Source: Oikopleura dioica | Lineage: Eukaryota > Animalia > Chordata | Reading direction: 5' to 3' | DNA: 64,000 bases | Assembly (NCBI GenBank): GCA_907165135.1 | Contig: OU015568.1 | Coordinates: 11,160,001 to 11,224,000 of the forward strand | In this document: in pieces, positions 35,608-44,227 of the stretch | Layout of the letters: every line of letters begins with the position of its first letter | How positions within the stretch are numbered: position 1 is the first letter of the stretch | Made by a program: the position numbers and the translations under genes | The notes under the pieces: generated by a model | What the model was told of the DNA's origin: nothing | What the model saw: the letters and a program-made list of their open reading frames with translations, nothing else | Databases searched by the model: none

Positions 35608-39885
<4,278 letters not shown>

Positions 39886-40597
39886 CTCTCGCTAGAATTT
39901 TCTGTAAGCGGTCTTGCTAAATCTCCATTTATTCTCGATTGAAAGCGCCGTCAGAAAAGGTAAAGAATAATAAAACGATAATATGAATTGAATTTACGAT
40001 CCGTTCAAATTCATCATTGTCTTTTCTCTGAAAAAGTAAAATTTGAGTTTGGCCCAATTTACGCCCTCGAGCATTTTTGGCATTGTATGAAAAGATAAAA
40101 TTATTTTCTCTTCATTCATTTCGTGAGTCATTCCTGTCTTACTCATTTCTCCAATCGTGACTAAAGAAAGAAAAAAAGGGAAATTGCAGATTTAAGATCT
40201 CAGAAACGTTCCACTACAGTAATTTCAGAGGGCCAATCAGATGAGAGAAAGAATTTTTAGAGCGCGCCACCCATCGATTTATCCCTATTTCTCGTGTGTG
40301 GTCCTTGATTTCTCAGAAAATGTCGTTAAAATCTCATTTATCTGCATAAATAACTTAATATTTTATTAAAAAAGACCCTTACCTGCTATCGCGTTATTGT
40401 ATTTTTCGGAATAGAGCAATCGCAATTGCTGAAGCAGACGAAATTCTATCCAGCTGGATGTTTTTCGAAGATGGTTTTTTCGACAATACCCAAATTTGGC
40501 TATTTATAAGCTCGAATCATTATTACTAGTTGTTGTGGACTGTGACAGCAGTTGACCTCAAACAACACTGAAAAAAGAGTTTTAAGATTGAATCGAA

Positions 40598-43500
40598 ATG
40601 GCAAGTTTTGGAACGTCTGGTAGTCTCGATTTGAAGGCTCACAAGATCGAGAAAATGGTCGATCCGGATGAGCCAGATCGAGAAAAAGAACTGGAGGAAA
40701 AACTGAAGGAAAATGAGCTAAAAGATAAAGCTTGGAGCTCAACAAAGAACCTCGACAAAGTCAAATACAGGCCTCGATGTGGAAAACCGATTGGACTGAA
40801 GTGGTATGGCGATGGGAAGAAAGATGACTCGGATGCTTTCGGTAGGAGAAAGAATTTCTTCCATGACTTCAAATTTTACATATAGTCTATATGATATATG
40901 ATATAGACAATCTTTACGATGACAAGGATTGGTTGCCAGTAGAAGAAGAAGATGATCGACTGGGAAAAGGATCAGACAAATACAGTATAAAGACAGTCAG
41001 TGTTACAGTCTCCACCGGTCAAAACTCCTCCCGTCAAGCCATGATTCCAGATAATCAAGTGAAACTAACACCTGGCTTTGATTTCATGTATGAATCGCCA
41101 CTTCTCCGCGATTTCGCTCTGGACCCAAATTCTGATCGTCGAGTTGCCAAAGATTTTCTGCGAGTAAGCTTCGATCGAAATACACCCGACTCCGTTGTAG
41201 GCAAGATTCTCAAAGATGGTTTCTACTGTCACGACCCGCACAATCAGAAAAACAAGAAAGATGCTCTCTGTTTATACCGCTTCTTTGCATACACGCCCTC
41301 ACAAGTCAGAAATCGAGGGTGCATCATGATCAACTACGATGCAGACTTCTGGGGCTCAGATAAGCTCGTTGATGTTGGGGACTACCGAAGATTGAAGAAA
41401 GAATTTGATGATTTGGAGAAAATACACGTGAAGGTTGACAAAGCTGAAGTGAGATACAGTCTTGTGAAAAGAGCGATTCCTTATGTTTGGAACTACTTTG
41501 GGAACTTTGATAAGATCAAAATTGTGTCTAAGTATGCTGCTCGAATTGGTCTTCTAATGTCGCCAACTCAGGCGACCATCTTTGTCCCAGATACAAAATG
41601 GGCCAGAGAAAGAGACATTGTTTGGGGCCCAGAAAAAGATCGAAAGAAGTATGAATTTACTGATGGTTGCGGACGAATGTCGACTCGTGTTGCTCAAATG
41701 TTTCGTGACAAGCTCAATCTCAAGCATTTGTATAAACATCAAGGAGCATACGGAGTACCATCTGTCATCCAGTTCCGAATGATGGGCTGCAAAGGCATCT
41801 TCGTCCATGATCCGACACTTGATGCTGCCAACCAGCCCTGGGTCATGATCCGGGACTCGCAGTGGAAATTCGATTGGAACATGGACACGGTCAAGTTCTT
41901 GGAACGAGATAAAGATGGGAATCCAGGGCGCGCAATGGGTGTTTGCTCTAACGGATTATCAAGGCCTTTTTCTTTTGGAAAACTGAATGAGCAGTTCGTG
42001 GTTTTGCTCGATTCTCTTGGGCTCGCGGACAATACATTCTTGGACATCCAAAAAGATCATTTCGAAAGGCTCAAACGATGTATGGACGACAGAATTGCAG
42101 CGTTTGAAATTCTCTCTTCTCAAAACCGCATGGCTGAAGCTGATCTTCTCCAAGAGACCGATGAAAACTCACCGTACCCACCAGAAGTTATCAACACCTT
42201 GAAGCGCTTCCGCAAGCCAGTTGTTGAACTGCCATCCAGCAACCCAAACGAAAGAGAGGAAAAGAACATCAAAAATGCAGCTTTTTACATCCCTATTTCG
42301 AAATCGAGAAACGTATACGGAGTCGCGGATATTTCAGGCAAACTCAAAAAAGGGCAATGTTTCGTTCAAGTCACTGACTACGTCGAAGAGTTTGATGAAA
42401 CAAAGGGGACAACAAGGAGAGTGACAAAAATGGTACCGTTGGACAACGGCGCTCGAGTACTTGTCAACAAATGCCCAACCTATCATCCTGGAGATTTCAG
42501 AGTTCTGGAGAACACGCACATTCCGGAACTGATGCACCTCTGCGATGTTATTGTTTTCCCTGTGGCAGGTCGACACAATCCTGATTTTAAGCGGCCACAT
42601 CCTCATGAGATGCACGAAAGGTACTTTTATTCCTCGGTTTTATATTAATGAGTGTTCAAAAGTGATTTGGATGGAGATGAATACTTCGTCAGTTGGGACG
42701 ACCGACTGATCCCCGAAAAGACAGACAAGCCTTTCCCGTGCCCAGACAAAACAAAAGGTGCAAACCAAAAGGAAGAGATCACAGTCCAAGATCTGATCCG
42801 TGAATTCACCGCTTCAGAGCACTTAGTTGGAAGGATCAATAATCTGTTCATCGACTGGGCGAAATTATCCGGAGCTAAATCAGACGAATGCAAGCAACTT
42901 GCGAAACTTTTCAATCAAGCTGTTGATACTGCAAAGCATGGTGGCAAAGTTGAAATATCATCGCACTTGACGGTAACTCTAGCGGCTAGAGTCAGCCTAA
43001 CCTATCTTGGTTTACAAAGTTTTTTTAGTCTGTTAAAGATAGAGATGGACAAAAGGTTCGCTTGCATGCAAAAATGGTTGCGCAAACGAAAAAACAACCA
43101 TTCAAAGCCTCCGCCGATTACCTCATCAGATACAAAGGACTCAACAATACTCTCTGGCCATTAGCTCAGAAGCCATTTTTTTATTTCATTGATATTAGCC
43201 TCTGCGATTCGGATTCAATGGTAGGCTTAATTTTAGAAATTAAAAAAATTAATATTGGTGTTAGATGAATTTTCACTGCATGCTGAAGTATGGCGTCTGG
43301 ACTGATCCCTACGAAAGAAATGTGACGAAGATTTCAGAGGCTTTCAACGCAACTCAGCGCCCAGGATCGGATAAAAAATCTCAATTCTTCTTTAACAAAT
43401 TACTTTTTCAATATCCAAAGAAAAGGGGCGATGGTACCGAACAATTCCATATTAAATGAGCGCGGCACAATTTATCTGATTGCCTACAGGGTCAAGAATA

Positions 43501-43985
43501 AGAAGAAATTCGCACAGGGTGTCGCACAAGTTATAGACAGAATCGGCATGTGGGAATACACATGGACGCCGTTTAAATACAGCGAACCAGGAATGATTCC
43601 TGTTCAATGGCTCTTCTGTAAAGACTTCGAAATTCCTGATTTGCCGATGTTTGGACACGAAGGAAAGAATTCGCTTCTTGACCTCGATCACACTGATCCA
43701 ATTCCTCAAAATATCGGCATGAAGCTTTTTGACAAATTCAAGAGAGGAAAGAACGCTGATCCGATGAGAAGGAAGTTAGGCGATAAATTATACGGGAAAA
43801 TGTAAGAAAGAACTTTTTGATCATTTTTAAATCGGTATCTTAGAAGCTATAAAGAAACACTCGTACAAACCAGTTATTTGGACAAGAAATGGGCCGAGAA
43901 TGAAAAAAATCTCCAAGAGAAAATCAAGAACAGCACAAAATTCTACGAAACCAATCAAAATACAAAATCTCGGAATCGGAAGTAG
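40598..43985 (+). CDS. Cellular RNA-dependent RNA polymerase (RDR/QDE-1/RRF family) with an in-frame C-terminal YTH-like domain
   Basis: RdRP motifs KYAARIG, FTDGCGRMS, PSVIQFRMMGCKG, KLNEQFVVLL, YGVADISGKLKKGQCFVQ, KCPTYHPGD, S|DLDGDEYFV, AVDTAKHG. Then GT-AG introns 42973-43028 and 43221-43264 (both phase 0) lead into a YTH-like region. Confidence 0.9.
43170..43745 (+). other. YTH-like domain coding segment of the RdRP gene
   Basis: FFYFIDIS..MLKYGVWT..NVTKISEAF..GTIYLI..QGVAQV..MWEYTW..GMIPVQWLFCKD..DHTDPIPQNIGMKLF follows the YTH consensus order. One GA-AG or GG-AG intron between about 43365 and 43460 is needed. Confidence 0.72.
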
Positions 43986-44227
43986 ACTGCCAGAAAGACA
44001 AACTTTCACTAACATGATCATTCACTAATAAAGGATAAAGTCATTCACAGAAATTTATATCATTCATTTCTGCAATCGCTACCTAGAAAAACTCAAACTC
44101 GGCGGGGAAGTGGTCGGAAATAAGCTCGGATATTGGTTAGGAAAAGCTGGAGAAATACTGAGAGTAGAAGTTACAAGTCATATTGATTTATTTCATTTTT
44201 GTAAGAAAGACTGTCGAATGTACATTT

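What the first reader, a model, noticed from the sequence alone, without database searches (positions are those of the whole stretch)
40598..43985. RNA-dependent RNA polymerase fused to a YTH (m6A-reader-type) domain
Seen: after the RdRP core (DLDGD...AVDTAKHG), two phase-0 GT-AG introns (42973-43028, 43221-43264) keep the frame into KPFFYFIDIS..MLKYGVWTDPYERNVTKISEAF. After one non-canonical intron (GA donor at 43370 to AG 43460, GA 43365 to AG 43425, or GG 43369 to AG 43420) it continues RGTIYLI..QGVAQV..GMWEYTW..GMIPVQWLFCKD..DHTDPIPQNIGMKLF, with a stop at 43985. Established: this matches the order of YTH motifs (YTHDF-type SIKYNIWCS..NKRLDAAY..GPVYLLFSV..CGVAEM..VW..W.G.F.V.WIFVKD..RDTQEVP), and the first aromatic-cage Trp (GVW) plus two further Trp candidates are present. 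I know of no described RdRP-YTH fusion. Inference: the polymerase selects m6A-marked transcripts, or a sequence motif as S. pombe Mmi1 does, as templates for secondary siRNA, linking an RNA mark directly to RNAi amplification in one polypeptide.
Basis: partly seen in the sequence, partly recalled or inferred. Interest (0 to 1): 0.95.

Follow-up and report, generated by a model that had tools for sequence, protein, structure and literature searches.

The report
Tunicate RNA polymerase fused to YTH
One expressed gene of the planktonic tunicate Oikopleura dioica joins an RNA-copying enzyme of the RNA-interference type to a divergent copy of the domain that other organisms use to read methylated adenine in RNA, a combination found in no paper searched, whose ligand is still unknown.

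Summary
Window 40598-43985 (+) is one seven-exon gene. My model is letter-identical to the public annotation CAG5087879.1 (Oikopleura dioica OKI2018_I69, 1032 aa, named only "RNA-dependent RNA polymerase"). A metatranscriptome contig shows the Oikopleura spliced leader joined 11 nt before the ATG.

Three full-length mRNA contigs of relatives carry polymerase and C-terminal domain in one reading frame; two begin with the spliced leader.

The polymerase core passes Pfam PF05183 (308 bits) and has an intact DLDGDE loop. The C-terminal domain fails Pfam YTH. But a family profile hits only YTH domains among all PDB sequences (14 of 14, best E 3e-4). AlphaFold models match nine YTH structures at Z 13-18, against 8 or less for EVE and ASCH.

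The first aromatic-cage Trp and a pocket Asn/Asp are conserved. The other two cage Trp are not: Phe and Tyr stand there. The domain is under purifying selection.

m6A reading and template selection remain untested inference.

The scan had noted this stretch before as a plain polymerase, and a second polymerase gene elsewhere in this genome.

The parts
40585..40597 (+). Spliced-leader trans-splice acceptor (AG 40585-40586) and 11-nt 5' UTR
   Evidence: Metatranscriptome contig X1 matches 40585-40814 with no mismatches and carries the loose end CCGATTTCGATTGTCTAAC before it. The same leader heads the mRNA contigs L001 and L007.
40598..40841 (+). Exon 1 (ATG; N-terminal region without a known domain)
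   Evidence: Intron 1 is 40842-40885. An alternative acceptor at 40906 gives the annotated 1025-aa isoform t2.
40886..42620 (+). Exon 2, the main part of the RdRP core
   Evidence: Pfam PF05183 E 2.7e-67 on this exon. On the whole protein it covers residues 170-762 at 308.5 bits.
42663..42972 (+). Exon 3: catalytic DLDGDE (42664-42681) to AVDTAKHG, the end of the RdRP profile
   Evidence: Pfam PF05183 E 2.8e-17. Splicing of introns 42621-42662 and 42973-43028 is seen in loose ends of a related lineage's RNA reads.
43029..43220 (+). Exon 4: about 40-residue linker and the first strand of the YTH fold (KPFFYFID)
   Evidence: In frame with exon 3.
43140..43760 (+). YTH-fold domain (protein residues about 801-972), spread over exons 4-6
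   Evidence: AlphaFold model pLDDT 77.7. VIA-align gives Z 17.6 to MRB1 YTH and 16.4 to YTHDF1. The profile search of PDB sequences returns 14 of 14 YTH hits. The top three ESM Atlas clusters are PF04146.
43265..43364 (+). Exon 5: helix with Asn829, then MLKYGVW with the first cage Trp (W839, 43298-43300)
   Evidence: HMMER aligns MlkYglW to YTHDF1 SIKYSIW. Family alignment.
43365..43425 (+). Non-canonical GA-AG intron 5 (61 nt, phase 1)
   Evidence: Conserved and in frame in L005. The junction is confirmed by orthologous mRNA L007. It is present in the public annotation.
43426..43801 (+). Exon 6: the remaining strands of the YTH fold, the cage loop GMWEYTWTPFKYSE, WLFCKDF, and DHTDPIPQNIGMKLFDKF
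43844..43985 (+). Exon 7: conserved helical tail (YLDKKWAENEK...) and stop TAG 43983-43985
   Evidence: X1 contig covers 43844-44038 and starts exactly at the acceptor. The tail is conserved in P0130, P0003, P0139 and P0145.
43986..44038 (+). 3' UTR with AATAAA at 44027-44032

Best explanation
This is a single SL-trans-spliced gene of Oikopleura dioica. It encodes a 1032-aa protein built of an N-terminal region without a known domain, a eukaryotic (RNAi-type) RNA-dependent RNA polymerase core with an intact DLDGDE catalytic loop, a linker of about 40 residues, a divergent YTH-fold domain of the YTHDF/MRB1 type, and a conserved helical tail.

Shown: the gene structure, transcription and trans-splicing, the fusion in one reading frame on mRNAs of relatives, the YTH fold, purifying selection on it, and monophyly of the four full-length fused sequences among those sampled.

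Inferred: the YTH arm is the polymerase's built-in template selector. It binds single-stranded RNA, most likely by inserting a methylated adenine (m6A-type) into a modified aromatic pocket (Trp or Phe, Phe, Phe or Tyr, plus Asn or Asp). This tethers the polymerase to particular transcripts, which are then copied into antisense RNA for small-RNA silencing.

My odds: fusion architecture about 0.95; YTH arm binds nucleic acid to choose templates about 0.65; the ligand is m6A or a close methylated base about 0.35-0.4.
For: The model equals annotated CAG5087879.1. The SL is joined at 40585/6 and the last exon is transcribed in a plankton metatranscriptome. mRNA contigs L001 (972 aa) and L007 (1033 aa, 78% identical orthologue) start with the SL and hold RdRP plus domain in one ORF; L008 (960 aa), cut at its 5' end, holds the same ORF. 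Genomic contig L002 has the catalytic motif through the first half of the domain in one uninterrupted ORF. RdRP scores PF05183 at 308 bits with DLDGDE. YTH: profile versus PDB gives 14 of 14 YTH hits, best E 3e-4 over the full length (4 of 4). The top 50 Foldseek hits are all YTH, E 3e-9. VIA-align gives Z 17.6-13.4 for nine YTH entries against 7.9 or less for EVE, ASCH and McrB-N. The top three ESM Atlas clusters are PF04146. In the family, the first cage position is W or F, Asn or Asp stands in the column HMMER aligns with YTHDF1 D401, and an invariant Phe lies in the cage loop. Cage residue numbers are from PMC6112310; the pocket role of D422 is from PMC9466600. pN/pS is about 0.23 for the domain, with synonymous sites saturated. 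The four full-length fused sequences put in the tree form one clade with 100/99 support.
Against: Pfam PF04146 is not reached: no hit for the window protein, and the best relative scores 13 bits against a cut-off of 22.1. The second and third cage Trp of YTHDF are not conserved as Trp. The window protein has PFKYSE where most paralogues have SPFxFxH. The column of YTHDF1 K395 is Asp or Glu here (alignment); the RNA-backbone role of that Lys is from memory. The cage loop is modelled with lower confidence, pLDDT about 67, and coordinates could not be inspected. No read evidence covers 43029-43843 in this exact lineage. Nothing is known here about m6A writers or RdRP-dependent small RNAs in Oikopleura.
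Confidence: 0.45

Rival explanations
1. The YTH arm binds RNA in a sequence-specific, methylation-independent way, as S. pombe Mmi1 does through a groove opposite its unused cage. The polymerase would then be aimed at transcripts that carry a motif, not a mark.
For: Mmi1 YTH matches the models at Z 13.4-13.5. Mmi1 keeps a cage yet does not bind m6A (PMC6112310). The pocket here is non-canonical, with Phe or Tyr for Trp and an acidic residue in the K395 column.
Against: MRB1 and YTHDF1 score higher than Mmi1 (Z 17.6 and 16.4 against 13.5). The profile search finds Pho92 and YTHDF but not Mmi1 at E up to 10. Pocket residues stay conserved under purifying selection: W or F, N or D, and an invariant F.
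Confidence: 0.25
2. The YTH fold is kept as a structural, regulatory or protein-binding module, or binds the polymerase's own product, and does not select templates.
For: Divergence is strong enough to fail Pfam. Canonical cage Trp are lost. The domain evolves about twice as fast as the RdRP core, pN 0.18 against 0.09.
Against: Every solved YTH domain retrieved here is a nucleic-acid binder. Pocket-lining positions are among the best-conserved columns. The closest non-appendicularian RdRPs carry another RNA-handling module, a UPF1-like helicase, at the C-terminus, which suggests this position holds RNA-engaging accessories.
Confidence: 0.15
3. The domain is not YTH proper but another PUA-like reader of the EVE or ASCH type that recognises a different modified base, possibly in DNA.
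For: P0042 gives a faint Pfam EVE hit, E 0.16 at 12.4 bits. EVE, ASCH and McrB-N structures appear at Z 7-8.
Against: YTH entries stand 5-10 Z units above EVE and ASCH. All 14 PDB sequence hits are YTH. The Atlas YTH clusters reach TM 0.60-0.68 against 0.50 for EVE.
Confidence: 0.07
4. Two genes or cistrons: the polymerase ends near exon 4 and the YTH exons form a separate trans-spliced message starting at ATG 43265. The 2010 Norwegian annotation implies this (CBY14941.1 of 784 aa plus CBY14942.1 of 215 aa).
For: The older annotation splits the orthologue exactly at MNFHC. An ATG follows the intron-4 acceptor directly. No reads of this lineage span 43029-43843.
Against: The SL-headed mRNA contigs L007 and L001, and L008, carry one continuous ORF. 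The first strand of the fold is encoded upstream of that ATG in exon 4. The 784-aa model ends in an out-of-frame tail. The newer annotation of this genome fuses them.
Confidence: 0.03

Closest known systems
YTHDF-type YTH domains (human YTHDF1-3; yeast Pho92/MRB1, PDB 4rcm, 4u8t, 4rcj)
   Same: Same fold (Z 16-18, rmsd 2.5-2.9 Å over about 155 residues). Same motif order: the KY..W helix and strand, G.A[EQ], W.F.[KR][DE], D.[QE].[IV]P...G..h..hF. The first cage Trp and the pocket Asp/Asn column are kept.
   Different: Identity is about 16-18%, below Pfam's threshold. The cage loop is about 5 residues longer, with Phe or Tyr in the segment that holds the second and third cage Trp. An acidic residue stands in the YTHDF1 K395 column. 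It is attached to a polymerase instead of a low-complexity effector region.
S. pombe Mmi1 YTH domain
   Same: A YTH fold used to pick specific transcripts for RNA-silencing or decay machinery (PMC6112310). Z 13.5.
   Different: Mmi1 binds a sequence motif on the face opposite its cage and recruits other enzymes. Here the enzyme is in the same chain, and the binding mode is unknown.
Cnidarian and amphioxus RdRP fused to a UPF1-like SF1 helicase (Acropora XP_044168746.1; Branchiostoma BL02069 in PMC6396948)
   Same: These are the closest non-appendicularian RdRP cores, 31-35% identical. The RdRP carries a C-terminal RNA-handling accessory domain.
   Different: The accessory is an AAA_11/AAA_12 helicase of about 1700 aa in total, not a YTH domain. 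The family HMM finds no YTH-like domain in the RdRP hits outside the family, which include single-exon ORFs of these helicase fusions. The YTH-fused clade sits on a long separate branch.
Nematode RRF-1/EGO-1 and plant RDR6 RdRP complexes
   Same: The same polymerase family (PF05183), with template choice delegated to RNA-binding partners. Tudor partners of nematode RdRP complexes are noted in PMC7641849; the rest is from general knowledge.
   Different: There the selectors are separate proteins guided by Argonaute and small RNA. Here a putative reader domain is covalently fused.

Membership tests
Eukaryotic RdRP (Pfam PF05183) | Profile match above the curated threshold | tested here: met
   308.5 bits against a cut-off of 23.8, residues 170-762, profile positions 28-546 of 582.
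Eukaryotic RdRP (Pfam PF05183) | Catalytic D.DGD loop | tested here: met
   DLDGDE at residues 661-666, window 42664-42681.
Eukaryotic RdRP (Pfam PF05183) | RNA-templated RNA synthesis | not testable with these tools
   Needs an enzyme assay.
YTH domain (Pfam PF04146) | Pfam profile match above the gathering score | tested here: not met
   No hit for P0108 or its residues 795-985 at E up to 10. The best relative, P0043, scores 13 bits against 22.1.
YTH domain (Pfam PF04146) | Significant family-profile similarity to solved YTH sequences | tested here: met
   The A3 profile against 177,635 PDB sequences gives 14 hits, all YTH: Pho92 E 3e-4, YTHDF1 0.0019, YTHDF2 0.0048, each over the full domain length.
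YTH domain (Pfam PF04146) | YTH three-dimensional fold, distinct from other PUA-like folds | tested here: met
   The window-domain model matches nine YTH entries at Z 17.6-13.4, against 7.9 or less for EVE, ASCH and McrB-N. The homologue model gives the same picture. Atlas result.
YTH domain (Pfam PF04146) | Three-residue aromatic cage (W/W/W, W/W/Y or W/W/L; PMC6112310) | tested here: inconclusive
   The first Trp is aligned and conserved as W or F. The segment that holds the second and third residues has an invariant F plus F or Y, not W, and HMMER's register differs between targets.
YTH domain (Pfam PF04146) | Preferential binding of m6A RNA | not testable with these tools
   Needs binding assays.
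EVE / ASCH (other PUA-like readers) | Best sequence or fold match to EVE or ASCH | tested here: not met
   EVE appears only at E 0.16 in one relative, Z 7.9 or less, TM 0.50.

The most novel reading that the evidence does not exclude
The fused YTH arm reads N6-methyladenosine (or a closely related methyl mark) on transcripts and thereby licenses, or directs, the attached polymerase to copy them into antisense RNA. That would be a one-protein link between an epitranscriptomic mark and RNAi-type amplification in a chordate.
Probability: 0.3. Interest if true: 0.9.

Novelty: new variant of a known kind. Interest (0 to 1): 0.74.

Why it matters
How eukaryotic RdRPs choose their templates is a central open point in RNA silencing. 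In known systems the choice is made by separate partners. Here a chordate lineage has welded a reader-type domain to the polymerase and kept it under selection across several diverged lineages, which turns the question into a direct experiment: what does this one domain bind?

If it reads m6A, it would be the first physical link between an RNA methyl mark and RNA-dependent RNA synthesis.

If it does not, it is a second Mmi1-like case of a YTH fold put to another use.

It also shows that public annotation misses the domain (named only 'RNA-dependent RNA polymerase'), and that an older annotation split the gene in two.

Tried and rejected
- **Pfam on separate exons and on whole C-terminal regions.** No YTH hit.
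- **phmmer of the homologue's C-terminus against 1.8 billion representatives.** It found only family members and one low-complexity false positive, P0050.
- **Word-based search restricted to the C-terminal region.** It found only the query.
- **ESM Atlas feature search.** No usable hit.
- **RNA reads.** The three raw-read runs carrying the species label belong to a diverged lineage (90-95% identity). They covered only short conserved stretches, so exons 4-6 of this lineage remain without read support.
- **Intron options GG 43369 to AG 43420 and GA 43370 to AG 43460.** Rejected because their acceptors are absent in L005.
- **A canonical GT donor seen in L005 inside the intron.** Rejected because it breaks the frame.
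- **Per-residue check of the cage on the models.** Not possible, because no coordinates are returned.
- **Profile-profile comparison with a YTH alignment.** Not done, because no bona fide YTH sequence with a session reference was available and I did not type one.
- **Literature searches.** Searches for an RdRP-YTH fusion, an Oikopleura RdRP, or Oikopleura METTL3 found nothing relevant.
Full report
**What is there.**
Window 40598-43985 on the + strand holds one gene of seven exons:
- exon 1, 40598-40841
- exon 2, 40886-42620
- exon 3, 42663-42972
- exon 4, 43029-43220
- exon 5, 43265-43364
- exon 6, 43426-43801
- exon 7, 43844-43985

Five introns of 42-56 nt are GT-AG. The sixth, 43365-43425 (61 nt), is GA-AG. 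The translation is 1032 aa. It is letter-for-letter identical to CAG5087879.1, the model Oidioi.mRNA.OKI2018_I69.PAR.g11656.t1 of Oikopleura dioica, which UniProt names only 'RNA-dependent RNA polymerase'. A second annotated isoform of 1025 aa uses the alternative intron-1 acceptor at 40906.

**Transcription and the fusion.**
- A plankton metatranscriptome contig matches 40585-40814 without a mismatch. It continues upstream into CCGATTTCGATTGTCTAAC, the 3' part of the spliced leader that also heads the mRNA contigs L001 and L007. The message is therefore trans-spliced at AG 40585-40586, 11 nt before the ATG. That this is the O. dioica leader sequence is also what I recall from the literature.
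- A second contig of the same run covers 43844-44038 and begins exactly at the last acceptor.
- Raw reads from three runs with the species label belong to a diverged lineage. Their loose ends nevertheless show the orthologue spliced at introns 2 and 3.
- No reads of this exact lineage cover 43029-43843. The fusion therefore rests on relatives and on the annotation.
- L007, from a JGI metatranscriptome (3152 nt), starts with the leader and has one ORF of 1033 aa that is 78% identical to the window protein. Its sequence CGACCAG|GAGCAATG lines up with window 43364|43426.
- L001 (3008 nt, also leader-headed) has one ORF of 972 aa.
- L008 gives a 960-aa version from another lineage.
- On genomic contig L002, the catalytic motif and the first half of the C-terminal domain lie in one uninterrupted ORF.
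- The 2010 Norwegian annotation split the orthologue into CBY14941.1 (784 aa, with an out-of-frame tail) and CBY14942.1 (215 aa, starting MNFHC). The mRNA contigs show this to be an annotation artefact.

**The polymerase.**
Pfam PF05183 scores 308.5 bits over residues 170-762, and the catalytic loop reads DLDGDE. The nearest non-appendicularian relatives, at 31-35% identity, belong to clusters that hold Acropora proteins of about 1700 aa. In those proteins the RdRP is followed by an AAA_11/AAA_12 UPF1-like helicase. PMC6396948 reports the same arrangement for one amphioxus candidate. In a maximum-likelihood tree of the RdRP core, the four full-length fused sequences form one clade (100/99) on a long branch.

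**The C-terminal domain.**
- Single-sequence methods fail. Pfam gives no YTH hit for the window protein. One relative reaches 13 bits against a cut-off of 22.1, and another gives a faint EVE hit.
- phmmer against 1.8 billion representatives finds only family members.
- Family profiles succeed. Against all 177,635 distinct PDB sequences, the first profile returns four hits and the second fourteen, and every hit is a YTH domain. These include Pho92/MRB1 at E 3e-4, YTHDF1 at 0.0019, and YTHDF2, YTHDF3, Toxoplasma CPSF4 and Arabidopsis CPSF30, most aligned over the whole domain.
- AlphaFold models of the homologue's domain and of the window's own domain both reach pLDDT 77.7 and pTM 0.77.
- Foldseek returns YTH domains for all top 50 PDB hits, best E 3.4e-9.
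- An exhaustive VIA-align search gives nine YTH entries at Z 17.6-13.4 (rmsd 2.3-2.9 Å). An archaeal PH1033 follows at 11.1, and EVE, ASCH and McrB-N follow at 7.9 or below.
- The three nearest ESM Atlas clusters are PF04146 families.

The fold is therefore YTH, nearest to the YTHDF/MRB1 type. It is a member by fold and by profile, but not by Pfam's single-sequence threshold.

**The pocket.**
Published cages are W432/W486/W491 (YTHDF2), W411/W465/W470 (YTHDF1), W377/W428/L439 (YTHDC1) and W200/W254/Y260 (MRB1) (PMC6112310). D422 lines the YTHDF2 pocket (PMC9466600).
- HMMER aligns the family's MlkYglW with YTHDF1 SIKYSIW. The first cage Trp is therefore W839 in the window protein, and W or F across the family.
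- The column of YTHDF1's second Asp in EDD is Asn or Asp in every member, Asn829 here.
- The segment that carries the second and third cage residues reads SPFxFxH in most members and PFKYSE in the window protein, with the Phe invariant.
- The loop is about five residues longer than in YTHDF, and its register differs between HMMER alignments.
- The column of YTHDF1 K395 is Asp or Glu here. From memory, that Lys contacts the RNA backbone.
- I could not inspect model coordinates, so the cage test is inconclusive.

**Selection and spread.**
Against the 85%-identical lineage (L005), synonymous sites are saturated (pS 0.77-0.84). Meanwhile pN is 0.088 in the RdRP core and 0.179 in the YTH domain. 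Both are constrained, and the domain evolves about twice as fast. At least seven diverged family lineages exist in marine metagenomes and transcriptomes. Wherever upstream sequence is present, it is the end of an RdRP (P0042, P0145, P0003, P0130, P0139, P0004, P0006).

**Mechanism.**
Shown: one chain carries an apparently active RdRP and a YTH-fold domain.

Inferred: the YTH arm binds single-stranded RNA and tethers the polymerase to chosen templates. The most likely ligand is a methylated adenine held in a modified pocket.

The main rival is Mmi1-like motif recognition without methylation. Lesser rivals are a non-selecting structural role, an EVE-like specificity, and two separate cistrons. 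The last of these is contradicted by the mRNA contigs of relatives.

**Novelty.**
The sequence is public, but its C-terminal domain is unannotated. Full-text searches found no paper on an RdRP-YTH fusion, on an Oikopleura cellular RdRP, or on m6A writers in Oikopleura. The animal RdRP survey PMC6396948 does not mention tunicates in its main text. I rate it a new variant of a known kind: two known domains in an undescribed architecture.

**Earlier notes of this scan.**
Earlier notes list this same stretch as a plain intron-containing RdRP, a second RdRP gene on another piece of this genome, and an element saturated with DRACH-type motifs 3.16 Mb upstream of this window. The last two are untested leads.

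Noticed in passing
window 40842-40906: Intron 1 has two acceptors (40885 and 40906). They give the annotated 1032-aa and 1025-aa isoforms, which differ by VYMIYDI.
   Followed up: partly
L005 / proteins P0118 and P0120: The 2010 Norwegian O. dioica annotation splits the orthologue into a 784-aa RdRP with an out-of-frame tail (CBY14941.1) and a 215-aa 'uncharacterized protein' (CBY14942.1) that is really the YTH part.
   Followed up: yes
window 37143-39818 (- strand): The divergently oriented upstream neighbour is an ABC transporter (ABC_membrane plus ABC_tran). Only about 770 nt separate its last ORF from the RdRP trans-splice site.
   Followed up: partly
proteins P0062-P0066, P0079: The closest non-appendicularian RdRPs are Acropora and metagenomic proteins of about 1700 aa with a C-terminal UPF1-like helicase (AAA_11/AAA_12). 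Some are named 'regulator of nonsense transcripts 1'.
   Followed up: partly
L002 3564-3650 versus window introns: Intron positions inside the domain differ between lineages. L002 has none where the window has introns 3-5, but has one before LVGLAQ. This fits rapid intron turnover in this group.
   Followed up: no
window versus L005, whole gene: Synonymous differences between the two 'O. dioica' lineages are saturated (pS 0.77-0.97), although both carry the same species label.
   Followed up: partly
same genome, other pieces (earlier notes s1-411145, s1-387034): A second intron-containing RdRP gene, and an element saturated on one strand with RGACUC (a DRACH-type motif), are noted elsewhere in this genome. 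Either could bear on what this enzyme targets.
   Followed up: no
protein P0050: A 907-aa tandem-repeat protein scored E 1.7e-9 in the phmmer search through 15 repeated weak matches. It is a low-complexity false positive.
   Followed up: yes
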